Part shown: one piece after another, positions 3,377-52,034 of the stretch
Layout of the letters: every line of letters begins with the position of its first letter
Position numbering within the stretch: the stretch's first letter is position 1
Virus record (IMG/VR): IMGVR_UViG_3300032236_002285
Location: 186,001 to 250,000 of that record
Direction: 5' to 3' (one strand)
DNA length: 64,000 nt
Notes under the pieces: generated by a model
What the model was told of the DNA's origin: nothing
What the model saw: the letters and a program-made list of their open reading frames with translations, nothing else
The model's database searches: none
Translations under genes and position numbers: made by a program

Positions 3377-3859
3377 ATGGTCCTAAGCAAAGCGTTGAAA
3401 ACTATTAAAATAAAGTTAGTCGAACCAACTCCAAATAAGTTAGCTTTTGTCAAATTGATAAAAGATTGCAGTGGCCTTGGTTTAAGAGAGGCAAAAGATT
3501 TATGTGATAATATACATGGTAATCCTGAAAAAGTACATGAGATGCCTATTCGTGACTGGGAAAGCATGGATTATAATACCGGTAAAACAACACCTGCAAT
3601 TACTGATTTTAGAAAAAAGTTCAACACTGAGATTAAAAATGTTGGTGGTAGATTTATTGTTAATGGTGGTGTTCAATGGGATAGAAATGTAAAAATGTTG
3701 ACACTTGGGATAGCTGAAAAATCTGATTATATCGAATTTATGAAAGATTATATTTTAAATAAATTTGGTAATTCAGAAGATTTACTTACCTTTGTACTCG
3801 ATAAAATTTCTAAAGAAGATTTACAAGAAATTTTTAATAAAACTAATATAGAATTATAA
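3377..3859 (+). CDS. protein with ribosomal L7/L12 C-terminal-like domain
   Basis: KLAFVKLIKDCSGLGLREAKDLCD matches the L12 CTD signature; start reassigned to ATG 3377. Confidence 0.7.
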   Translation: MVLSKALKTIKIKLVEPTPNKLAFVKLIKDCSGLGLREAKDLCDNIHGNPEKVHEMPIRDWESMDYNTGKTTPAITDFRKKFNTEIKNVGGRFIVNGGVQWDRNVKMLTLGIAEKSDYIEFMKDYILNKFGNSEDLLTFVLDKISKEDLQEIFNKTNIEL

Positions 3860-25890: not shown

Positions 25891-26465
25891 TGAAAGATAT
25901 TGGTTACCTTTTTGACCTATTGAAAAAATCTAACATATCTCTATTGGGATATAAATTTAATCAAGAAAGGCTTAAAGATGAGATTATTTCAAAACTACCT
26001 CACTTGGTGGTTCATGAAATAAACTCGTCTTTTTCTTTTAAATCTTTTTTAAGAGATTTGAAACTTCAATCAATTTTAGAAACTAGTGAGACTATAAAAA
26101 ATCCAGAGTATCTTGTTTTAGATTTGAATGATATTAGATTTAAATCAGATGATTTAGGTGATAGACAAAGACAAATATCTAATATTCTAAATAGGCTTAG
26201 AGAAGATATGTACTCTGGTTCTGATGTGCCTTATAAACTTTTGATACTCACCTCACTATACAGTAGTGGAAAGAACGTCGATGATGTTAATATTACAAAT
26301 TTTTCTGGCGGTAGCAAACCAATCTTTATGAGTGACGTAGTATTTGTAATGCAAGAAGAATCAATGAAAGTAATAAAGAATAGATTTGATGAAAACAACA
26401 TTGATATTTCTTACAATAAATTAAAAGATTATAACTATATTTGCAACTATGAAAATAACAACTAA
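25890..26465 (+). CDS. hypothetical protein (possible degenerate RecA/DnaB-fold C-terminus)
   Basis: GGSKPIFMSDVVFVM...KVIKNRF. Confidence 0.55.
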   Translation: MKDIGYLFDLLKKSNISLLGYKFNQERLKDEIISKLPHLVVHEINSSFSFKSFLRDLKLQSILETSETIKNPEYLVLDLNDIRFKSDDLGDRQRQISNILNRLREDMYSGSDVPYKLLILTSLYSSGKNVDDVNITNFSGGSKPIFMSDVVFVMQEESMKVIKNRFDENNIDISYNKLKDYNYICNYENNN

Positions 26466-26895
26466 CAAAAAAGCTTATTACGAATACTTTGTCATTGAAG
26501 ACTTTGATGCTGGTATTATGCTTTTAGGAAGTGAAGTAAAGTCAATCAGAGAAGGTAACTTGAGTTTAATTGATTGTTTTGCTTACATTTCAGATGGTGA
26601 ACTTTGGTTAAAAAATATGAAAGTGGCTCGATATAAACAAGTCCATGTTGCTGAAAAACATGAAGAAAATCGAGACAAAAAATTACTTCTCAATAGAAAA
26701 GAAATAAATAAAATTGAAAAGTTACTTCAAGATAATGGAACAACTATGGTTCCTTTAGAAGTATTCACAGCACATAATCGAATTAAAGTTAAGATTGGTG
26801 TTGTTAAAGGTAAGAAGCTATATGATAAAAGATCCACTATTAAAGAGAGAGATATAAAAAGAGAGATAAACAGAGAAAGTAATTTTAATATATAA
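26449..26895 (+). CDS. smpB: SsrA-binding protein SmpB
   Basis: NKKAYYEYF...AGIMLLGSEVKSIR...RDKKLLLNRKEI...KGKKLYDKR. Confidence 0.95.
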   Translation: MKITTNKKAYYEYFVIEDFDAGIMLLGSEVKSIREGNLSLIDCFAYISDGELWLKNMKVARYKQVHVAEKHEENRDKKLLLNRKEINKIEKLLQDNGTTMVPLEVFTAHNRIKVKIGVVKGKKLYDKRSTIKERDIKREINRESNFNI

Positions 26896-33174: not shown

Positions 33175-33717
33175 ATGAAAGAGGAAATATTAAAGTTAAG
33201 AAGTGAAGGTAAGACTTTTAATGAAATAAAAGAAATACTAAAATGTTCAAAATCTACAATATCTTACCATTGTAGTGATGAACAAAAAGAAAAATCTAGA
33301 AATAGAACTAGAAAAAGAAGAGAGAATTTAATTCACTCTAAACTTGAAAGTTTTATCTATAGAAAAGAAAAAAATGTAAAAGAAGGAATAAGAAAGTTTC
33401 AAAAAACTGACTCAAATTCTAAAGGAAGGGTTAATAGTAATATTAAAACAACATTTAATTGGGTTGATGTTTTGAATAAGTTTGGTGAAAATACATATTG
33501 TTATTTGTCTGGAGAGAAAATTAACCTATATGAAGATAACTACAACTTTGACCATATTATACCAGTTAGTAAAAATGGTAGTAATAGTTTAGAAAACTTA
33601 GGAATTCTACACGAAAAAGTAAATAGAATGAAATCTGACTTATCACCAGAAGAATTAATAGAATGGTGTAAAAAGATTTTAGAGTTTAATAATTATAAAA
33701 TAGAAAAATTAGATTAA
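33175..33717 (+). mobile_element. HTH-HNH endonuclease inserted in tRNA array
   Basis: DHIIPVSKNGSNSLENLGILHEKVNRMKSD. Confidence 0.85.
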
Positions 33718-33871: not shown

Positions 33872-33958
33872 GGTTCTGTCGCTTAGCGGCTATAGCAACT
33901 GGCTTTTAACCAGTAGAGATAATGTTCTCAACCGTGGGTTCGAGTCCCACCAGGACCA
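33872..33958 (+). tRNA. tRNA-Lys(UUU) with long variable arm
   Basis: ACTGG-CTTTTAA-CCAGT then GAGA-taatgt-TCTC arm. Confidence 0.8.
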
Positions 33959-33966
33959 CTAAAAAC

Positions 33967-34050
33967 ACTCCTGTCGCTCAGAGGTCGAGAGCAACTGGCT
34001 TTTAACCAGTAGACGCAAGTCCATCGTAGGTTCGAATCCTACCAGGAGTA
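33967..34050 (+). tRNA. tRNA-Lys(UUU) with long variable arm
   Basis: ACTGG-CTTTTAA-CCAGT then GAC-GCAA-GTC arm. Confidence 0.8.
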
Positions 34051-34054
34051 CTAA

Positions 34055-34137
34055 CGATTCGTCGCATAGTGGCTATTGCACCTGACTCTTAATCAGGCGA
34101 AGAAATTCAATCGTGGGTTCGAGTCCCACCGGGTCGA
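34055..34137 (+). tRNA. tRNA-Lys(CUU) with long variable arm
   Basis: CCTGA-CTCTTAA-TCAGG then GAA-gaaa-TTC arm. Confidence 0.8.
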
Positions 34138-34145
34138 CAAAAAAT

Positions 34146-34251
34146 AGTCAAGTGGCGAAAAGGCGAGACGCATAAGAGTTAATCTTTTGGGGTAGACCGA
34201 AGAACCGCGAAAAAGAAGGTTCCCATACAGGTTCGAGTCCTGTCTTGACTA
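34146..34251 (+). tRNA. atypical tRNA-Leu(UAA)-like gene with very long variable region
   Basis: AGTCAAG/CTTGACT acceptor, A73, Leu-like D arm, weak anticodon arm GT-TAA-TC, ~35 nt variable region. Confidence 0.55.
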
Positions 34252-34260
34252 CAAAAATAT

Positions 34261-34404
34261 GGAGAGAGTAGCTCAGTTGGTTAGAGCACGTATTCATTCT
34301 CTGACAAGGATTCTCTGATTATGGTCAACATAATTAGTAGTGATGTTAAGAGATACTTCGGTCTGTTAAACCCGTGGTCGTAGGTTCGAGTCCTACCTCT
34401 CTCC
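34261..34404 (+). tRNA. tRNA-Asn(GUU) interrupted by ~69 nt structured insert
   Basis: Removing 34291-34359 restores CGGGT-CTGTTAA-ACCCG; extra G-1:C73 pair. Confidence 0.7.
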
Positions 34405-34432
34405 CAAATATTAGATTATTAAAAAAATAAAA

Positions 34433-35065
34433 ATGGAAATAAAATTAGAAAGTACTTACAAAGGAACAAGGATTCTTTTTAAGGACAGCGCTAAAAATAA
34501 AAGAAAGTTACTAAATAGCATGATTGATATTTTAGAATCATATGGTTATCAGGAAATAATGATACCTATTATTCAAAAACAAGAAACATTTCAGTCAAAA
34601 GTTGGTGATGAAAACAGAAATATGATGTTTAACTTCAAAGACAGAGGTGATAGAGATTTGTGTTTATCTCCAGAGTACACGGCAATTGTTCAACAATTAT
34701 CAAGTGATAAAATGAAATATGATAAAGATGTAAAAATGTTTTATATCGGTGAATGTTTCAGAGGAGAAAATACACAATCTGGAAGATGGAGACAATTTAC
34801 ACAATTTGGAGTTGAAGTTATAAATCCAAGTAAAGATTATACTGATGAAATGGTTGAAATTGCCAGTAAACTAATTGAGTTAGTTACAAAAAATTATGAA
34901 GTAAATCTGGAAACTACAAGAGGACTTGACTACTACAAAGGTGGAAAAGGATTTGAAATTGCTTGTCCCGAATTAGGATCATCTAAGCAAATTTGTGGAG
35001 GTGGTTCATATGATGGTGGTATTGGATTTGCTGTTGGTGTAGATAGATTACTATTATGTAAATAA
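34433..35065 (+). CDS. minimal histidyl-tRNA synthetase-like catalytic core (no anticodon-binding domain)
   Basis: Motif 1 GYQEIMIPII, LSPEYTA, motif 2 FRGENTQSGRWRQFTQFGVE, GLDYY, motif 3 GGGSYD-GGIGFAVGVDRL; only 210 aa. Confidence 0.8.
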   Translation: MEIKLESTYKGTRILFKDSAKNKRKLLNSMIDILESYGYQEIMIPIIQKQETFQSKVGDENRNMMFNFKDRGDRDLCLSPEYTAIVQQLSSDKMKYDKDVKMFYIGECFRGENTQSGRWRQFTQFGVEVINPSKDYTDEMVEIASKLIELVTKNYEVNLETTRGLDYYKGGKGFEIACPELGSSKQICGGGSYDGGIGFAVGVDRLLLCK

Positions 35066-35074
35066 AAATAAATT

Positions 35075-35202
35075 GGGGATGTAGCTCAGTGGTAGAGAAA
35101 ACTATCTCTTTTGAAAATTTACCTCATAAGAGTGTTGATTGAGAGAGTTACTTCGTATATTTTGAAATTATAAGGTCGTGGGTTCGAATCCCACCATCCC
35201 CA
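35075..35202 (+). tRNA. tRNA (anticodon probably UGA) interrupted by ~55-60 nt structured insert
   Basis: GGGGATG/CATCCCC acceptor, canonical D and T arms, insert ending TTACTTCG; anticodon assignment uncertain. Confidence 0.6.
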
Positions 35203-35281
35203 CAAAAAAGATTTGGTAAATCAATAAAAAAGATTTACTTTTGTAAAAACAAAGAAAAGAAAATTAATATATAATAAAGTT

Positions 35282-35359
35282 ATGAAAACAATTATGCTTA
35301 CATCGAAGTCGTCAAGTAGTCGCTCGTCAAAACCGAGTGAGGTTCGATCGTATTCATAA
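35282..35359 (+). CDS. attenuator leader peptide 2 (Ser/Arg)
   Basis: MKTIMLTSKSSSSRSSKPSEVRSYS; 10 Ser and 2 Arg in 25 aa; promoter 35212-35243. Confidence 0.85.
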   Translation: MKTIMLTSKSSSSRSSKPSEVRSYS

Positions 35360-35382
35360 TATTCGTATAAAGATATTTTATG

Positions 35383-35415
35383 AAACCCTCGAACTTAATG
35401 TTTGAGGGTTTTTTT
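35383..35415 (+). terminator. attenuator terminator 2
   Basis: AAACCCTCGAAC-ttaat-GTTTGAGGGTTT followed by T run. Confidence 0.9.
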
Positions 35416-35426
35416 GTTTTATATAT

Positions 35427-35501
35427 GGTTCTATAGTTTAAATGGATAAAACACTCGGCTACGAACCGAGAGACGTGAAGGTTCGAATCCTTCTGGAACT
35501 A
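35427..35501 (+). tRNA. tRNA-Arg(ACG)
   Basis: CTCGG-CTACGAA-CCGAG. Confidence 0.9.
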
Positions 35502-45409: not shown

Positions 45410-45440
45410 AACCCAGTCTGACTTTCAGACTGGGTTTTTT
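45410..45440 (+). terminator. attenuator terminator 3
   Basis: AACCCAGTCTG-acttt-CAGACTGGGTT followed by T run. Confidence 0.9.
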
Positions 45441-45455
45441 GTTTTAAAATAAATT

Positions 45456-45540
45456 GGGAGTATAACGTCAGCGGTGTGTAAGCCGCCCCTAATCAAAGAG
45501 ACGTATAGAGGTAACTTGTGTGCAAATCCAGGTACTCCCA
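45456..45540 (+). tRNA. degenerate tRNA-like element (no resolvable anticodon arm)
   Basis: Perfect GGGAGTA/TACTCCC acceptor and TGCAAAT T-loop-like segment; middle does not fold canonically. Confidence 0.4.
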
Positions 45541-45546
45541 CAAAAT

Positions 45547-45625: not shown

Positions 45626-45711
45626 GCTACGGTATGCAAACCGGAATAAGCGACCAGACTTTCAATCTGGACATCGAAAGATGTGTGCGGGTTCGAGCCC
45701 CGTCCGTAGTA
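45626..45711 (+). tRNA. tRNA-Glu(UUC) with long variable arm
   Basis: CCAGA-CTTTCAA-TCTGG then ACATC-GAAA-GATGT. Confidence 0.8.
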
Positions 45712-45718
45712 CAAATAA

Positions 45719-46688: not shown

Positions 46689-46692
46689 ATTT

Positions 46693-46776
46693 CGGCAGGT
46701 ACCGATGGTGTCTTATACACACTATAACCGTAGCGGGAAGTTGAAAACGTGGGTTCGAATCCCACCCTGCCGACCA
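46693..46776 (+). tRNA. D-arm-deficient tRNA-like gene, anticodon UAU (Ile-like)
   Basis: CGGCAGG/CCTGCCG acceptor, A73-CCA, canonical T arm, GGTGT-CTTATAC-ACACT, long V region, almost no D arm. Confidence 0.5.
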
Positions 46777-46836: not shown

Positions 46837-46908
46837 GCGGGTATCGTATAGTGGCTATTACTCCTTCCTTCCAAGTAGGAGACGTCGGTTCGATTCCGGC
46901 TACCCGCT
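46837..46908 (+). tRNA. tRNA-Gly(UCC)
   Basis: Loop CT-TCC-AA; GCG acceptor, U73. Confidence 0.9.
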
Positions 46909-46916
46909 CAAATTTT

Positions 46917-46991
46917 GGGGTCACATGTACCAAGGCTAGGCGATGATGCTTTGCAAGCATCGTGTGGTGAGTTCGATTCTCACTGGCTCCA
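46917..46991 (+). tRNA. tRNA-Ala(UGC)
   Basis: GATGC-TTTGCAA-GCATC; G3:U70. Confidence 0.85.
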
Positions 46992-47298: not shown

Positions 47299-47372
47299 GG
47301 GGAATTAGCTCATTTGGCTAGAGCGCTTGTCTGGCAGACAAGAGGTGACGAGTTCAAATCTCGTATTCTCCA
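47299..47372 (+). tRNA. tRNA-Ala(GGC)
   Basis: CTTGT-CTGGCAG-ACAAG; G3:U70. Confidence 0.9.
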
Positions 47373-47379
47373 CTAATAA

Positions 47380-47459
47380 GCGGGTGTCGTATAGTGGCAC
47401 GTAGTAGATTATGCCGGTCTTCCAAACCGGAGATGTGAGTTCGATTCTCATCACCCGCT
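47380..47459 (+). tRNA. tRNA-Gly(UCC) with enlarged D-loop
   Basis: CCGGT-CTTCCAA-ACCGG; U73. Confidence 0.85.
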
Positions 47460-47461
47460 CA

Positions 47462-47605
47462 AAGATAGTAGTAATGTACGAGTGTTACTTCGTATTTCCA
47501 ACGACTAGTTCAGGTTCGAATCCTGGGTTCCGCTCAAATGATAATATGCGGGATTAGTGTAACGGTAGCACAGTAAAAACACACTCAGCAAATTTTCTCT
47601 ATCTT
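47462..47605 (+). tRNA. circularly permuted tRNA (Gly-type acceptor) flanked by the split insert module
   Basis: 3' half (anticodon, T arm, GTTCCGC-T) at 47491-47534 precedes 5' half (GCGGGAT plus D arm) at 47548-47574; flanks pair AAGATAG/CTATCTT and GAGTGT/ACACTC. Confidence 0.7.
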
Positions 47606-47609
47606 ATTA

Positions 47610-47679
47610 GGGCCAGATGCCAACGGCAGGTCAACTCGCTTGCACCGAGATTGTTTGGGTTCGATTCCCACTGTGTCCA
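47610..47679 (+). tRNA. degenerate tRNA-Ala(UGC)-like gene
   Basis: CTCG-CTTGCAC-CGAG; G3:U70-like pair; bulged acceptor. Confidence 0.5.
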
Positions 47680-47835
47680 CTATATTTATTTTTCATAGCT
47701 ACCTAAACTTCAATATATTAATTATATATATACCATTAGATTAGATTAAAGAAAGGTTTTTAGACAGTTTAGTATTTTTAGATTAAAGAATGACTTGAAG
47801 TTAGACAATTAACTAAAAAATAACTATGCTAAAAA

Positions 47836-50799
47836 ATGAAAAAGATCCTAAAGTTCTTACTAGTGTCATTGACTCTAGTATTTTTTGTGCCTAAACAAGC
47901 ACAAGCCTCTCATTGCGCTGGAGCTGAATTATTATTCCAATGGCTTCATGACTCAACTTATCAACTTTATTACAAGTTTTACCGTGATTGTGCCGGTATT
48001 AATGAGCCAACAAATGTTACAGTTTGTTGTAGTAACAATTGTAATTCAACTACAATCAACGTAATTTTAAACAAAGTTACTACACTTATTCCTCCTGGTG
48101 TAAATAATGGAAATGAAGTTGCTAGAGTTTGTCCTGGTATACATACCACTTGTGGTAATCCAGCCGGAACAACACCTGGCTACAGAGAATGGTGGTATGC
48201 TAATACTGTAACTCTACCATCAAGATGTAACCACTGGACTTTTTCAGTAAGTCAGTCAGCTAGAAACTCTGGTATTACTAATTTATCTAATCCAGGTTCT
48301 CAAAATCTTTATACAGAAGCCACACTTGATAATAGAGATGCTCAAGGTGATACCTCACCTTTCTTTTCTGTTAAGCCGGTCCCGTATATCTGTGCTAATA
48401 TACCATACACTTATAACAATGGAGCTTATGACTTAAATAACGACTCTATGGTGTTTAAAATTGTTCAACCAAATGGTGGCTCAGGTTGTCCTCCAACCAC
48501 GTCAGCCATTGCTTTTGCTAATACAACACCAAGTTTAAATCTAACTGATAATCCTTTACAAACAAACAATACTTTTTCTATAAATGCTCAAAATGGATTG
48601 ATGAGTTTTACTCCAGCTGGAACACAAATTGCAGTTGTAACTATTCAAGTAGATGAATATAGAAATGGTAGAAAAATTGGTTCTGTAATGCGTGATATTC
48701 AAATTATTGTTTTGTCTTGTAATGTTCAGCAACCAGAAGTAAATATATCTGCTGCTTCTTTAAATAATGCAACTCTTGATAATAATGGAAACATTACAGC
48801 TTGTGCTGGAACACCTTTTAGTTTTTGTTTTGATGCTACAACACCAGATTCAAATGGTATTTTACTCGCATCTGATAACTCAAATATTGTAATGCCTAAT
48901 TCAGTAGTATCATATACTAATCAAACTACAGATACGGTTACTGGTTGTTTTTCTTGGTGGCCTTCTGTGTATGATACAGGTTATAAAATTTTTACAATAA
49001 CTATAATGGATTCATCTTGTCGTCCTCCTGGCTTAATGTTTTCACAAACATTTACCTTACCAATTTATGTTTGGCCTGCGACTAATATTCTAAGTGATAC
49101 CACAATCTGTAGAGGTGGTGCTGCAAATTTACTTGCTGTTGGTGGTGGAAATTTTATTTGGTCGGTTTTACCAGGAGGTTCTGCTTTATCAACTTTAAAC
49201 TGCACAAACTGCTCAAATCCAGTTGCTACTCCAATAATCACAACTCAGTATGTAGCTACATCTCAAATAACAAATGCTATTTGTAAAAATAAAGATACGG
49301 TAACAGTAGCGGTTATTCAACCATTTCAGATTATACTACCTGATACAACAACATGTGTTAATAATTCTTTACAATTAAATGCAGTAGTTAATACAACAAA
49401 TAATTATACTATATCCTGGACACCAAATACTTATTTAAGTAATGCTGGTATTAATAATCCAATTGTAACACCACCATCTGGTCAATCATTGATAACTTAC
49501 TATGTTAAAGTTTCTTCAATTGGTTCATCAGCTTGTTCAGTTACAGATACATTCAAATTAAAAGTTTTACAAGGATTTACTATCTATAATCATGATACAA
49601 CAATTTGTCTTGGTAAATCAGTAAATATAGCCGGCTCTGGTGATGCTTTATATAATTATACTTGGACACCAACCAGTGGTATAAGTACAATACTTACACC
49701 ATCAATAACACCAAATGTAGTTACAACAACAACGTATATTTTAACAGGTAAATATCCTGGTTGTAAAGATTCTACTAATAAAATTAAAATCACAACAGAA
49801 CCTGTACCAACTGTAGTAGCTGGTGCTGATAGACAAATATGTAGTGGTGATACTATTCATCTTACACCTTTAGTTACTCCAAGTTATCCATATGTTTACA
49901 CTTGGACACCAGGATCTTCATTAGATAATCCAAATTCTGAATTTGCTATCTTTTCAGGATTAATCACAACTCATTTATCACTAACTGTTAAATCACCAGT
50001 TGCTAATTGTTCATCAGCTGATAGTTTAATTATTAATGTAGTTAAACAATCTTTCTTAAAGGTTTCACCACAAGACACTTCAATTTGTCCATCTGATACA
50101 GTTATGATTAAATTAACCACACCTAATGATAAGTTAGTTATTTTTAATTGGAGCCCTCATAATTTTATCAGTGATTATAATTCAGTTAATCCTTATTTAT
50201 ACCCACCAACATCAATGGTTTATACTGCTTGGGCTACTGATACAGCTGGTTGTAATGATACTATATCAGCTTATATTGAAATTAGACCAGGTGCTGTAAT
50301 TGACATGCCTACATCAATTGGTTTATATCCTGGTGATTCTTATCAAATAACACCTCAAACTAACTGTACTAAATTTATTTGGTTTCCATCAAGTGGTTTA
50401 AATTATGACTCATTATCAAATCCAACAGTGACCAACTTAGGAGTTAATACTAAGTATATAGTTATTGGTCAAACAGAATGGGGATGTAAAGTATCTGATT
50501 CAATAAATGTAATGGTTATTAATGATTCTTATATTGATATACCTAATGCTTTTTCACCTACAGGTGATCACAATAAAACACTAAAAGTAATTCATTTAGG
50601 TTCTGCTACTCTTGAATATTTTAGAATATACAATAGATGGGGTAATAAAGTTTTTGAAACAAATGATATTAATGTTGGATGGGATGGTACTTATAATGGT
50701 CAAGCTCAATCACAAGGTGTTTATGTTTATGAAGTAAAAGCAATAACATATAAAGGTAGGGTCTTTATTAAACAAGGCAATATAACTTTGATGAAATAA
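47836..50799 (+). CDS. secreted adhesin-like protein with T9SS type-B (gliding motility-associated) C-terminal domain
   Basis: Signal peptide, ASHCAGAE start, Ig/PKD-like repeats, IPNAFSP...FRIYNRWGNKVFE...WDGTYNG...GVYVY...GNITLMK. Confidence 0.9.
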   Translation: MKKILKFLLVSLTLVFFVPKQAQASHCAGAELLFQWLHDSTYQLYYKFYRDCAGINEPTNVTVCCSNNCNSTTINVILNKVTTLIPPGVNNGNEVARVCPGIHTTCGNPAGTTPGYREWWYANTVTLPSRCNHWTFSVSQSARNSGITNLSNPGSQNLYTEATLDNRDAQGDTSPFFSVKPVPYICANIPYTYNNGAYDLNNDSMVFKIVQPNGGSGCPPTTSAIAFANTTPSLNLTDNPLQTNNTFSINAQNGLMSFTPAGTQIAVVTIQVDEYRNGRKIGSVMRDIQIIVLSCNVQQPEVNISAASLNNATLDNNGNITACAGTPFSFCFDATTPDSNGILLASDNSNIVMPNSVVSYTNQTTDTVTGCFSWWPSVYDTGYKIFTITIMDSSCRPPGLMFSQTFTLPIYVWPATNILSDTTICRGGAANLLAVGGGNFIWSVLPGGSALSTLNCTNCSNPVATPIITTQYVATSQITNAICKNKDTVTVAVIQPFQIILPDTTTCVNNSLQLNAVVNTTNNYTISWTPNTYLSNAGINNPIVTPPSGQSLITYYVKVSSIGSSACSVTDTFKLKVLQGFTIYNHDTTICLGKSVNIAGSGDALYNYTWTPTSGISTILTPSITPNVVTTTTYILTGKYPGCKDSTNKIKITTEPVPTVVAGADRQICSGDTIHLTPLVTPSYPYVYTWTPGSSLDNPNSEFAIFSGLITTHLSLTVKSPVANCSSADSLIINVVKQSFLKVSPQDTSICPSDTVMIKLTTPNDKLVIFNWSPHNFISDYNSVNPYLYPPTSMVYTAWATDTAGCNDTISAYIEIRPGAVIDMPTSIGLYPGDSYQITPQTNCTKFIWFPSSGLNYDSLSNPTVTNLGVNTKYIVIGQTEWGCKVSDSINVMVINDSYIDIPNAFSPTGDHNKTLKVIHLGSATLEYFRIYNRWGNKVFETNDINVGWDGTYNGQAQSQGVYVYEVKAITYKGRVFIKQGNITLMK

Positions 50800-51215: not shown

Positions 51216-52034
51216 ATGAAAAACAAAGACTTCGGTGATCGTATGAAAATGTACGAAAACCAAACCTGCGGAATCAGATTGATTCCCAGAATTCCGGTAA
51301 TTGCTCGCCTTGATGGAAAAGGCTTTTCCAAATTCACTAAAGGTCTTAAAAGACCGTATGATGAAAGATTATCACGTTTGATGGCTGAAACAACTAAGTA
51401 TTTAGTTAAAGAAACTAATGCTAATTGTGGATATACTCAATCAGATGAAATTACTTTAATGTGGTACACTGATAAGATTGATGCTTCAATTTACTTTGAT
51501 GGTCGTCTTTTCAAAATGTTATCTGATCTTTCAGCAATGGCTTCTGTATTTTTTAACAGAAAACTTAGTGAATATCTTCCAGAAAAGTCTGACAAGATGC
51601 CAAGGTTTGACTGTAGAGTTTACAATGTACCTACTTTAGATGAGGCTATGAATTCATTCCTTTGGAGAGAACAAGATGCTACTAAGAACTCAATTACTAT
51701 GGCGGCTTCTGCTTATTACTCTCACAAAGAGTTAATGAATAAGAATGGATCTGAAAAACAAGAAATGCTTTTTCAAAAAGGTGTTAATTGGAATGATTAT
51801 CCAACTTTTTTCAAAAGAGGTTCTTATGTACAAAGAAAAAGAGTTTTAACTCCTTTCACTGCTGAAGAAATTGAAAGATTACCAGCTAAACACAATGCTA
51901 GAAAAGACCCTAGTATGTTAATTGAAAGATGGGTTATTGATGTAGTTGAACTACCTAAATTATCAAGTATTGAAAACTCAGTTGAAGTTATTGTATTTGG
52001 TGAAGAACCTAAACTAAAAAGTCCAGTTATTTAA
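51216..52034 (+). CDS. thg1: tRNA(His) guanylyltransferase Thg1 / Thg1-like 3'-5' polymerase
   Basis: RLDGKGFSKFT, YTQSDEITL, FDCRV, WREQDATKNSI. Confidence 0.9.
   Translation: MKNKDFGDRMKMYENQTCGIRLIPRIPVIARLDGKGFSKFTKGLKRPYDERLSRLMAETTKYLVKETNANCGYTQSDEITLMWYTDKIDASIYFDGRLFKMLSDLSAMASVFFNRKLSEYLPEKSDKMPRFDCRVYNVPTLDEAMNSFLWREQDATKNSITMAASAYYSHKELMNKNGSEKQEMLFQKGVNWNDYPTFFKRGSYVQRKRVLTPFTAEEIERLPAKHNARKDPSMLIERWVIDVVELPKLSSIENSVEVIVFGEEPKLKSPVI

What the first reader, a model, noticed from the sequence alone, without database searches (positions are those of the whole stretch)
47462..47605. Circularly permuted tRNA gene opened in the loop of the insert module
The 3' half (anticodon region, T arm, acceptor strand GTTCCGC, U73) lies upstream of the 5' half (GCGGGAT, D arm), joined by a ~13 nt linker that would cap the acceptor stem. 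The outer flanks rebuild the insert: GAGTGT(47480) with ACACTC(47581), and AAGATAG(47462) with CTATCTT(47599). Established: permuted tRNAs in red algae and some archaea mature through a circular intermediate. A permutation point inside the module suggests the module is the splice signal. The rejoined stem GTCGT/ACGAC gives loop ATTTCCA, so the anticodon register (UCC or UUC) is ambiguous although the acceptor is Gly-type.
Basis: partly seen in the sequence, partly recalled or inferred. Interest (0 to 1): 0.88.

Follow-up and report, generated by a model that had tools for sequence, protein, structure and literature searches.

The report
Phage Y RNA that mimics tRNA
The "permuted tRNA" is real in the sequence, but it is best read as a Y RNA, a tRNA look-alike whose paired ends form the docking stem for the phage's own Ro60 protein, and not as a split tRNA gene that must be spliced through a circle.

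Summary
From 5' to 3' the element has an anticodon-like hairpin, a T arm, the acceptor 3' strand with U73, a 13-nt linker, the acceptor 5' strand and a D arm. All of this sits inside two helices formed by the flanks.

The arrangement is conserved. Eleven independent assemblies give 95.6% paired cells and 20 of 32 pairs with compensatory changes, so misassembly and chance are excluded.

The "insert module" is not a splice signal. It is the stem of a Y RNA:
- A covariance model built from the permuted elements finds full-length relatives (45-85 bits) beside Ro60 (TROVE) genes, on the same strand, in at least 23 phage loci.
- The window's own 476-kb phage contig encodes a Ro60 ortholog, with a module-only RNA just upstream of it.
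- Rfam's YrlA model aligns full-length, below threshold, to relatives.
- The order T arm, closed acceptor, D arm and the YUAY motif are YrlA hallmarks.

The unusual points are a complete anticodon-like arm, a 7-bp acceptor stem, discriminators in relatives that match the anticodon, a diverged Ro60-binding motif, and a location in a tRNA array far from Ro60.

I rate it a new variant of a known kind, of moderate interest.

The parts
47462..47468 (+). Outer stem, 5' strand (AAGATAG), formed with the 3' end of the RNA
   Evidence: Pairs with 47599-47605. The helix covaries: AAGAT/ATCTT, AAGT/ACTT, GGCTG/CAGCC, AATTG/CAATT.
47469..47479 (+). Conserved purine-rich internal-loop strand (TAGTAATGTAC; with the preceding TAG it reads TAGTAGTAATG). 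Presumed Ro60-contact strand and a diverged counterpart of GNCGAAN0-1G
   Evidence: TAG[T/C][A/G]A..ATG is conserved in 54 family members. Relatives beside Ro60 genes read TAGCGAAATG or TAGCGATAAG. The motif definition comes from PMC4201824.
47480..47485 (+). Inner stem, 5' strand (GAGTGT)
   Evidence: Pairs with 47581-47586. Five of 6 pairs show compensatory changes among 11 sequences.
47485..47489 (+). TTACT junction. TTAC corresponds to the YUAY motif that precedes the V stem-loop in YrlA
   Evidence: GTTACTTCG is nearly invariant in the family. YUAY is described in PMC4201824.
47490..47505 (+). Anticodon-like hairpin: 4-bp stem TCGT/ACGA, 7-nt loop ATTTCCA, then C43. It occupies the place of the YrlA 'V' stem-loop
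   Evidence: The pair next to the loop covaries, UA in 7 sequences and AU in 4. Relatives have loops CTGCAAT, ATTCCAA, ATTTCAA, ATTAGGA, CTCCAAA and CTGTTAA.
47510..47526 (+). T arm (TCAGG TTCGAAT CCTGG)
   Evidence: 100% paired, with 3 of 5 pairs compensatory.
47527..47554 (+). Acceptor-like stem closed by a loop: 3' strand GTTCCGC, discriminator T 47534, 13-nt linker 47535-47547, 5' strand GCGGGAT
   Evidence: Seven bp. Six of 7 pairs are compensatory in 11 sequences and 7 of 7 in 53. The loop ranges from 2 to 21 nt in relatives.
47555..47573 (+). TA (positions 8-9), D arm (GTGT AACGGTA GCAC), then A26 and G27
   Evidence: D stem 97.7% paired.
47574..47586 (+). TAAAAAC bulge followed by the inner stem 3' strand (ACACTC)
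   Evidence: The block AAAAACACACT is shared with the module-only RNA upstream of the phage's Ro60 gene (L145 3547-3616).
47587..47605 (+). Pyrimidine-rich internal-loop strand (AGCAAATTTTCT) and outer stem 3' strand (CTATCTT)
   Evidence: TTTTCTCT is conserved in the family.
34263..34405 (+). Related element: a normal-order tRNA-Asn(GUU) body carrying the same module as a closed hairpin arm between the D arm and the anticodon stem
   Evidence: Homologues in L009 and L071 have covarying module helices.
35075..35203 (+). Related element: a tRNA-like RNA (acceptor GGGGATG/CATCCCC, D arm, T arm) with a module-like insert of about 77 nt ending in GAGAGTTACTTCG
   Evidence: Homologue in L009. Rfam gives only a weak tmRNA alignment (31 bits; gathering score 47).

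Best explanation
Window 47462-47605 is a gene for a Y RNA of the YrlA type, a non-coding tRNA mimic. That stem is the docking site for the phage-encoded Ro60 (Rsr/TROVE) protein.

The body between the stem strands is a tRNA-shaped domain in the order characteristic of YrlA: V/anticodon-like hairpin, T arm, acceptor-like stem closed by a loop, then D arm. The gene looks circularly permuted because the RNA's ends lie where a tRNA's anticodon-stem side is, not at the acceptor.

Shown here:
- the structure and its covariation;
- homology of the module to the stems of RNAs lying next to Ro60 genes;
- a Ro60 gene in the same phage genome.

Inferred:
- Ro60 binds the stem.
- The tRNA-like domain serves as the effector or tether module, presenting a tRNA shape to a tRNA-binding partner during infection, as proposed for bacterial YrlA.
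- Because the acceptor stem has 7 bp, RNase P probably cuts at G1 and CCA is added. This happens to M. smegmatis YrlA and gives a two-piece RNA held together by the stem. No splicing or circle is required.
For: 1. Architecture. The outer stem, asymmetric internal loop, inner stem, UUAC (YUAY), hairpin, T arm, closed 7-bp acceptor and D arm are read, folded and supported by covariation.
2. Rfam's YrlA model aligns over its full length (positions 1-114) to family members: L094 at 33 bits, E 7e-6 in the local search, and L162, L099 and L097 at 38-40 bits. The anticodon-like hairpin appears there as a 15-nt insertion.
3. Model R1, built only from permuted elements found in tRNA arrays, finds full-length hits of 45-85 bits (E 1e-7 to 1e-15). 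They lie 0.04-4 kb from TROVE genes and always on the gene's strand, in at least 23 of 79 Ro60 loci (coordinates).
4. In about 365 kb of control loci, R1 hit only four true module loci.
5. The window is 100% identical to two fragments (3.2 and 13.2 kb) of contig IMGVR_UViG_3300032236_002285. That contig encodes a TROVE + Ro60-vWA protein (L145:4001-5449).
6. LR745206.1, which holds the homologous permuted element, also encodes a Ro60 ortholog. So do the contigs of L077 and L009.
7. About 400 nt upstream of the window phage's Ro60 gene lies a module-only RNA. It shares AGTGTTACTTCG and AAAAACACACT with the window module.
8. Literature. Y RNAs are encoded within about 4 kb of Ro60 on the same strand in bacteria and phages. 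YrlA has a T arm, acceptor stem-loop, D arm, V stem-loop and YUAY. M. smegmatis YrlA, which has a 7-bp acceptor, is cut by RNase P and receives CCA in vivo (PMC4201824). Thermus phage phiLo Ro60 has two adjacent Y-like RNAs with a CGAA motif (PMC12135203).
Against: - The window element is not next to Ro60. No TROVE protein is encoded in the 64-kb window. In LR745206.1 the two features are about 125 kb apart.
- The canonical Ro60-binding motif GNCGAAN0-1G is absent. The window has UAGUAGUAAUG.
- Rfam YrlA gives no hit on the window element even at E<=10, and relatives stay below the gathering score of 69.
- Binding to Ro60 is not shown by any computation here.
- The tRNA domain is more complete than in described YrlA RNAs. 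It has a 7-nt anticodon-like loop with U33, and relatives have discriminators that fit the anticodon. This would also suit a real decoding tRNA.
Confidence: 0.78

Rival explanations
1. This is a genuine circularly permuted tRNA gene. The leader and trailer pair, an endonuclease cuts at both module-exon junctions, a ligase joins G27 to U28 to make a circle, and RNase P and RNase Z remove the linker. The product is an ordinary decoding tRNA.
For: - The joined halves give a canonical cloverleaf by ARAGORN, both in the window and in L001.
- The anticodon-like loops of relatives are canonical 7-nt loops. Their discriminators follow the identity rules in about 12 of 13 parsable cases: Gly/Cys U73, Trp/Asn/Ser G73, Leu/Thr/Arg A73. 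The rules themselves are established knowledge.
- The acceptor stem always has 7 bp.
- An arm left at positions 27/28 would probably clash with the ribosome. This is an inference.
Against: - The module exists on its own next to Ro60 genes.
- The module is also grafted at the acceptor position, in the variable region, or in place of the anticodon arm in other members.
- There is no bulge-helix-bulge motif. The distance from the conserved TAC to the first stem nucleotide is 0, 1, 2 or 3 nt in different members.
- No known self-cleaving or self-splicing RNA family matches.
- No splicing endonuclease, RtcB or Rnl was found among the window ORFs scanned.
- A normal isoacceptor usually sits directly upstream: Gly(UCC) at 46837 and 47380 in the window, and Trp(CCA) in L094.
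- The window loop has C37.
Confidence: 0.1
2. This is a decaying tRNA rearrangement or an assembly artefact with no function. For example, the 3' half of one Gly tRNA and the 5' half of the next could have been left behind after deletions in a tandem array.
For: - The tRNA arrays are riddled with homing endonucleases: HNH at 33175-33717, and GIY-YIG, HNH and DUF559 in related loci.
- They also hold degenerate tRNA-like sequences, for example 47611-47679 at exactly the Rfam gathering score.
- The window loop ATTTCCA is not canonical.
Against: - The same order is found in at least 11 distinct sequences from independent assemblies, including a curated complete 634-kb genome. Compensatory changes occur in every helix, including the acceptor helix that spans the supposed breakpoint.
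- The flanks are more conserved than the tRNA part.
Confidence: 0.02
3. This is a two-piece decoding tRNA without Ro60 involvement. RNase P and RNase Z open the linker, and the module merely clamps the two halves together, as in two-piece (permuted) tmRNA.
For: - The gene order is the same as in permuted tmRNA genes (established knowledge).
- The phage encodes SmpB (26449-26895).
- The acceptor has 7 bp and relatives have identity-consistent discriminators.
Against: - The single-stranded parts of the module are conserved across very divergent members. A clamp would conserve only the pairing.
- The module is tightly linked to Ro60 genes.
- Module-only RNAs exist.
- There is no tag reading frame and no pseudoknot, and no tmRNA_permuted match on the element.
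Confidence: 0.08

Closest known systems
YrlA-class bacterial and phage Y RNAs (Rfam RF02553; Chen et al. 2014, PMC4201824), especially M. smegmatis YrlA
   Same: - The 5' and 3' ends pair into a stem with an internal loop.
- A YUAY motif is followed by a V stem-loop, T arm, closed acceptor-like stem and D arm.
- The genome encodes a Ro60 ortholog, and close relatives lie within 4 kb of it on the same strand.
- The acceptor has 7 bp, as in M. smegmatis YrlA, which is cut by RNase P and receives CCA.
   Different: - The GNCGAAN0-1G motif is replaced by UAGUAGUAAUG.
- The element is below Rfam's threshold, with no hit at all on the window copy.
- The 'V' stem-loop is a full anticodon-arm look-alike with a 7-nt loop.
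- The gene sits in a tRNA array far from Ro60.
- The same stem module also occurs as a closed insert in normal-order tRNAs and at other cloverleaf junctions.
D. radiodurans Yrn1 Y RNA
   Same: Relatives of the window module frame a D-like, anticodon-like and T arm series in normal order (L004, L005, L008, L121 7678-7803). This is the Yrn1 orientation described in PMC4201824.
   Different: The window element has the YrlA orientation, not the Yrn1 one. The phage versions have 7-nt loops where Yrn1 has 6 nt.
Circularly permuted tRNA genes of Cyanidioschyzon merolae, some green algae and Thermofilum
   Same: The 3' half lies upstream of the 5' half, and the acceptor strands are joined by a short intervening sequence. 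The leader and trailer pair. The joined halves form a canonical cloverleaf.
   Different: There is no bulge-helix-bulge motif and no splicing endonuclease is known in this system. The leader and trailer are a conserved, autonomous RNA module linked to Ro60. The host is bacterial.
Two-piece (permuted) tmRNA genes
   Same: This is a bacterial and phage precedent for a permuted tRNA-like gene whose acceptor linker is cut out, leaving two base-paired pieces. The phage encodes SmpB.
   Different: The element has no tag reading frame, no pseudoknots and no G3-U70 pair. It is only 144 nt long.

Membership tests
YrlA-type Y RNA | Terminal stem formed by the 5' and 3' ends, enclosing a T arm, closed acceptor-like stem-loop and D arm in that order | tested here: met
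YrlA-type Y RNA | Conserved YUAY at the start of the V region | tested here: met
   UUAC at 47485-47488, nearly invariant in 54 relatives. The motif is described in PMC4201824.
YrlA-type Y RNA | GNCGAAN0-1G motif near the 5' end (the Ro60/Rsr contact) | tested here: not met
   The window has UAGUAGUAAUG. Ro60-adjacent relatives have UAGCGAAAUG, UAGCGAUAAG or UGGCGAUGAAUG, which are near matches. The window motif therefore looks like a diverged form.
YrlA-type Y RNA | Encoded within about 4 kb of a Ro60 (TROVE) gene on the same strand | tested here: not met
   There is no TROVE protein in the 64-kb window. Ro60 is elsewhere on the same contig. The feature is met by many relatives.
YrlA-type Y RNA | Reaches the Rfam RF02553 gathering score (69 bits) | tested here: not met
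   No hit at E<=10 on 47455-47612. Relatives score 30-40 bits over the full model length.
YrlA-type Y RNA | Bound by Ro60/Rsr in vivo | not testable with these tools
   This needs pull-down or gel-shift experiments.
Circularly permuted tRNA gene (C. merolae type) | 3' half upstream of the 5' half, with the halves joining into a canonical cloverleaf | tested here: met
Circularly permuted tRNA gene (C. merolae type) | Bulge-helix-bulge motif formed by the leader and trailer at the processing sites | tested here: not met
   The junction is a TAC/GTA mini-helix with a 5-nt bulge on one strand and 0-3 nt on the other. The exon side is a multi-helix junction, and the offsets vary between relatives.
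Circularly permuted tRNA gene (C. merolae type) | tRNA splicing endonuclease and RNA ligase available | tested here: inconclusive
   None was found among the window ORFs scanned against Pfam. The rest of the 476-kb genome and the host were not examined.
Circularly permuted tRNA gene (C. merolae type) | Circular intermediate and joined mature tRNA | not testable with these tools
   This needs RNA from infected cells.
Two-piece tmRNA | Tag reading frame, pseudoknots, Ala identity (G3-U70) and a match to the tmRNA_permuted model | tested here: not met
   Pair 3:70 is G-C. There is no tmRNA_permuted hit on the element.
Known self-cleaving or self-splicing RNAs (group I, hammerhead, twister, pistol, hatchet, HDV-like) | Match to the Rfam model | tested here: not met
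   No such hits at E<=10 on 47370-47700, 47455-47612 or 34140-35440.

The most novel reading that the evidence does not exclude
These phage Y RNAs carry complete tRNA domains that keep the identity features of real tRNAs: a 7-bp acceptor, a discriminator that fits the anticodon-like loop, and canonical D and T loops. On this reading they are not mere shape mimics. RNase P opens the acceptor loop, CCA is added, and the two-piece RNA is aminoacylated or engaged by a specific aminoacyl-tRNA synthetase, EF-Tu, or a host anticodon nuclease. That would tether the phage Ro60 to the translation or tRNA-damage machinery, or make the RNA a decoy or sensor for tRNA-targeting defences. The same module grafted at four different cloverleaf junctions, and as a closed arm in otherwise normal tRNAs (34263-34405), would then be a general Ro60 handle for tRNAs.
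Probability: 0.25. Interest if true: 0.8.

Novelty: new variant of a known kind. Interest (0 to 1): 0.55.

Why it matters
- Y RNAs and Ro60 are known in bacteria and some phages, but what the tRNA-like domain does is still open.
- This huge-phage family is large and diverse, and Rfam's YrlA model does not reach its threshold on the members tested.
- It shows the Ro60-binding stem combined with full tRNA bodies in several topologies: YrlA-like, Yrn1-like, opened in the variable region, lacking an anticodon arm, and as a closed insert in normal tRNAs.
- The anticodon-like loops and discriminators co-vary as in real tRNAs. This gives a direct handle on whether Y RNAs engage specific synthetases, nucleases or the ribosome.
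- It warns annotators that "permuted" or "intron-bearing" tRNAs in phage tRNA arrays may be Y RNAs.
- It removes what would otherwise look like a first case of archaeal or eukaryal-style permuted tRNA splicing in a bacterial virus.

Tried and rejected
1. Bulge-helix-bulge reading of the junction. I rejected it: the exon side is not a continuous helix, and the canonical cut sites would not restore the anticodon stem.
2. Fixed cut sites relative to the conserved TACTTCG. I rejected this because the offsets are 0-3 nt in different members.
3. Known ribozymes or introns. No Rfam hits.
4. Box C/D or kink-turn reading of GUGAUG...CUGA. These motifs are present only in two closed-insert copies and are not general.
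5. The idea that the in-frame UAG UAG UAA/UGA marks a tmRNA-like tag end. L077 has CAA and L078 has a different sequence there, and the strands are not contiguous in the open forms.
6. A Thg1-like gene lies downstream of the permuted element in the window, L001 and L022. I noted it, but it can be explained by synteny and I did not pursue it.
7. Protein co-occurrence clustering around module loci gave mostly homing endonucleases. The TROVE link only emerged when ORFs of 450-600 aa were scanned.
8. The first genome-contig scan used too short a gap and found nothing. The second found Saprospiraceae and other MAG contigs that are tRNA arrays.
9. Literature searches for permuted tRNAs or tRNA introns in phages found nothing relevant.

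Full report
**Observation**

The window is part of a huge phage genome.
- Its best DNA matches are the 634-kb and 642-kb "uncultured phage" genomes LR745206.1 and LR756502.1.
- It is 100% identical to two fragments (3.2 and 13.2 kb) of the 476-kb IMG/VR contig IMGVR_UViG_3300032236_002285.
- It holds two tRNA arrays, at 32.7-35.9 kb and 45.0-47.7 kb.

The order is:
1. leader;
2. a hairpin with a 4-bp stem and the loop ATTTCCA;
3. TAGT;
4. T arm;
5. GTTCCGC plus T73;
6. a 13-nt linker;
7. GCGGGAT;
8. TA and the D arm;
9. A26 and G27;
10. trailer.

The leader and trailer pair twice: AAGATAG with CTATCTT, and GAGTGT with ACACTC. Neither ARAGORN nor Rfam calls a tRNA here. When the two halves are joined in a script, ARAGORN returns a canonical cloverleaf. 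RNAfold of the native order recovers all six helices, but the z-score is only -1.82.

**Is it more than chance or misassembly?**

Yes. LR745206.1 carries a homologue with the same permuted order (L001 6302-6442). Its acceptor is different but still complementary (GTCGGTG/CACCGGC), it has U73, and its loop CTGCAAT reads Cys GCA.

Pattern searches in IMG/VR, JGI metagenomes and GTDB genomes gave further copies:

| Locus | Loop | Reading | Discriminator | Note |
|---|---|---|---|---|
| L022, L065 | ATTCCAA | Gly UCC | U73 | |
| L029, L071 | ATTTCCA | as in the window | U73 | |
| L077 | ATTTCAA | Glu UUC | U73 | |
| L078 | ATTAGGA | Leu UAG | A73 | linker only 3 nt |
| L094 | CTCCAAA | Trp CCA | G73 | |
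| L079, L083 | CTGTTAA | Asn GUU | G73 | |

These are read.

On the MAFFT alignment of 11 distinct elements:
- 95.6% of cells pair, against 34-43% when partners are slid;
- 20 of 32 pairs change on both sides;
- no shuffle out of 500 reaches this;
- the acceptor helix, which spans the supposed breakpoint, has 6 of 7 compensatory pairs.

**What the flanking module is**

The same leader and trailer sequences occur in three other contexts. The leader reads TAGTAGTRATG ... GWTACTTCG. The trailer reads ... TTTTCTCT plus the outer-stem strand.

- (a) As a closed hairpin arm inside normal-order tRNA bodies. Examples are window 34263-34405, an Asn GUU body with homologues in L009 and L071 whose module helices covary, and window 35075-35203.
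- (b) As an open frame around a D-like, anticodon-like and T arm series in normal order (L004, L005, L008 and others).
- (c) As an open frame around a T arm, closed acceptor and D-like arm with no anticodon arm (L079 5310-5444). In L121 7811-7954 the anticodon arm follows the D arm instead.

The module can therefore be attached at several different junctions of a tRNA-shaped body. The point where it meets the anticodon-like stem varies. The conserved TAC is followed by 0, 1, 2 or 3 nt before the stem begins. That is hard to reconcile with a fixed splice site. The junction also does not form a bulge-helix-bulge.

**The link to Ro60**

Rfam's YrlA model (RF02553) aligned over its whole length to the L094 element:
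- outer stem to outer stem;
- internal loop to internal loop, with AUG shared;
- inner stem to inner stem;
- CUA to UAC;
- T arm, closed acceptor and D arm in the same order;
- the anticodon-like hairpin shows up as a 15-nt insertion.

This alignment prompted a scan of ORFs of about 450-600 aa in module-bearing loci. L079 and L008 encode TROVE-domain proteins a few kb from their module RNAs; the L079 protein also has a Ro60-type vWA domain.

- tblastn found an orthologue in LR745206.1 with 49.6% identity and E 3e-145.
- A search seeded with that orthologue found one in the window's own contig (L145), and in the contigs of L077 and L009.
- Pfam confirms TROVE, with weaker Ro60-type vWA matches, in these proteins.
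- No TROVE protein lies inside the window.

I then built a covariance model, R1, from the 11 permuted elements only.

- In 79 loci fetched around Ro60 genes, R1 finds full-length matches of 45-85 bits. All are on the Ro60 strand and 0.04-4 kb from the gene, in at least 23 loci, often two or three in tandem.
- In about 365 kb of loci fetched by chance pattern matches, R1 hits only four true module loci.
- Reading these RNAs shows the same GTTACTTCG junction. Their 5' loop strands read UAGCGAAAUG, UAGCGAUAAG or UGGCGAUGAAUG. These are near matches to the GNCGAAN0-1G motif that Chen et al. assign to Rsr binding (PMC4201824).
- Module-only RNAs without any tRNA part also sit beside Ro60. One of them lies about 400 nt upstream of the window phage's Ro60 gene (L145 3547-3616). 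It shares AGTGTTACTTCG and AAAAACACACT with the window module.
- Rfam YrlA aligns full-length at 38-40 bits to three Ro60-adjacent members, below the gathering score of 69.
- On 53 aligned members, 95.1% of cells pair and 29 of 32 pairs are compensatory. That alignment is fitted to the model.

**Interpretation**

This is the published signature of Y RNAs.
- They are encoded near Ro60 on the same strand, in bacteria and in phages.
- YrlA has a terminal stem, YUAY, a V stem-loop, a T arm, a closed acceptor stem and a D arm.
- D. radiodurans Yrn1 has the opposite orientation, with an anticodon-like arm.
- M. smegmatis YrlA, the one with a 7-bp acceptor, is cut by RNase P and receives CCA in vivo (PMC4201824).
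- A phage Ro60 with two adjacent Y-like RNAs has been studied structurally (PMC12135203).

The window element is therefore best explained as a YrlA-like Y RNA of the phage's Ro60 system. The "permutation" is the normal YrlA layout, and the "insert module" is the Y stem.

Steps that are inferred, not shown:
- that Ro60 binds this diverged stem;
- that the acceptor loop is opened by RNase P;
- what the tRNA-like domain recruits.

**What is unusual**

1. The window copy fails three formal YrlA criteria: the Ro60-binding motif, proximity to Ro60, and the Rfam score. I therefore do not file it as a member of RF02553. I call it a new variant.
2. The stem-loop in the V position is a full anticodon-arm look-alike.
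3. In the relatives that can be parsed, the discriminator follows the identity rule for the anticodon in about 12 of 13 cases: Gly and Cys with U73, Trp, Asn and Ser with G73, Leu, Thr and Arg with A73 (the rules are established knowledge).
4. Acceptor stems are almost always 7 bp.

Points 2-4 keep open the possibility that these RNAs are processed, CCA-tailed and even charged. The window loop AUUUCCA (U33, UUC, C37) recurs in L029 and L071. It also recurs in a Ro60-adjacent Yrn1-type member, L121 7678-7803. It is therefore maintained and not a random lesion.

**Rivals**

I cannot exclude it without RNA data.
- Artefact or decay is excluded by the covariation.
- A Ro60-independent two-piece tRNA does not explain the conserved loop strands or the linkage to Ro60 genes.

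**Context**

The window also encodes:
- SmpB;
- a Thg1-like protein, a truncated HisRS-like protein, YqeY and an HNH endonuclease inside a tRNA array;
- an S1-domain protein;
- an L7/L12-like protein;
- a sigma factor.

A CHU_C type IX secretion domain protein lies right after the element. Module-bearing contigs binned with Saprospiraceae MAGs point to a Bacteroidota host.

Noticed in passing
window 33872-33959, 33967-34051, 34055-34138, 45626-45712: tRNA-Lys(UUU/CUU) and tRNA-Glu(UUC) genes of 84-88 nt with a long, paired variable arm. This is a class II-like shape for amino acids that normally use class I tRNAs. Related phage loci have Asn, Asp, Val, Met and Trp tRNAs of 84-88 nt.
   Followed up: no
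window 47380-47459: tRNA-Gly(UCC), 54 bits in Rfam, with an 11-nt insertion in the D loop (CACGTAGTAGA). The insertion contains GTAGTAG, which resembles the module's TAGTAGT. It may be a footprint or a mini-insert.
   Followed up: no
window 34263-34405: A tRNA-Asn(GUU) body with the Y-stem module as a closed arm of about 69 nt between G28 and G29. No other Asn tRNA was called in the window. Homologues in L009 and L071 have covarying module helices.
   Followed up: partly
window 35075-35203: A tRNA-like RNA (GGGGATG/CATCCCC, A73) with a module-like insert of about 77 nt and an unclear anticodon arm. It is conserved in L009. Rfam gives only a tmRNA alignment at 31 bits.
   Followed up: partly
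window 34148-34252: A 105-nt tRNA-like sequence (GTCAAG.../...CTTGAC, with a good T arm). It has an odd anticodon region (AAGAGTTAATCTTTT) and a very long extra segment. Neither ARAGORN nor Rfam calls it.
   Followed up: no
window 47611-47679: A degenerate tRNA-Ala(UGC)-like sequence directly after the Y RNA, at exactly the Rfam gathering score (29 bits), with acceptor mismatches and a shortened D arm. L001 has an intact tRNA-Ala(UGC) at the same place.
   Followed up: no
window 45440-45545, 46690-46775, 46916-46990: Further tRNA-like stretches with good T arms that neither ARAGORN nor Rfam calls. The last one has a TTTGCAA loop.
   Followed up: no
window 51216-52034; L001 6645-7457; L022 11603 onward: A Thg1-like protein of 271-272 aa (tRNA-His guanylyltransferase / 3'-5' polymerase family) lies downstream of the permuted element in three related phages. 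In L001 it is separated only by a tRNA-Ala.
   Followed up: partly
window 26449-26895: An SmpB gene (E 4e-52), but no tmRNA was detected in the window by ARAGORN or Rfam. A related Ro60 locus (L104 1062-1220) has a permuted tmRNA above threshold.
   Followed up: no
window 34433-35065: A 210-aa ORF between two module-bearing tRNAs matches only the N-terminal catalytic part of histidyl-tRNA synthetase. It may be a truncated or split aaRS.
   Followed up: no
L145 3547-3616 and about 3627-3680 (same contig as the window): Two short module-only RNAs, Y stem without a tRNA domain (YrlB-like), lie just upstream of the phage Ro60 gene.
   Followed up: partly
L121 7560-7960: Three different module RNAs lie in tandem downstream of one Ro60 gene: a short one, a Yrn1-type one whose loop is ATTTCCA, and a tRNA opened in the variable region with the order T arm, acceptor, D arm, anticodon arm.
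   Followed up: partly
window 47836-50799: A 987-aa protein with a CHU_C type IX secretion sorting domain is encoded in a phage genome. Together with module-bearing contigs binned with Saprospiraceae MAGs, this suggests a Bacteroidota host.
   Followed up: no
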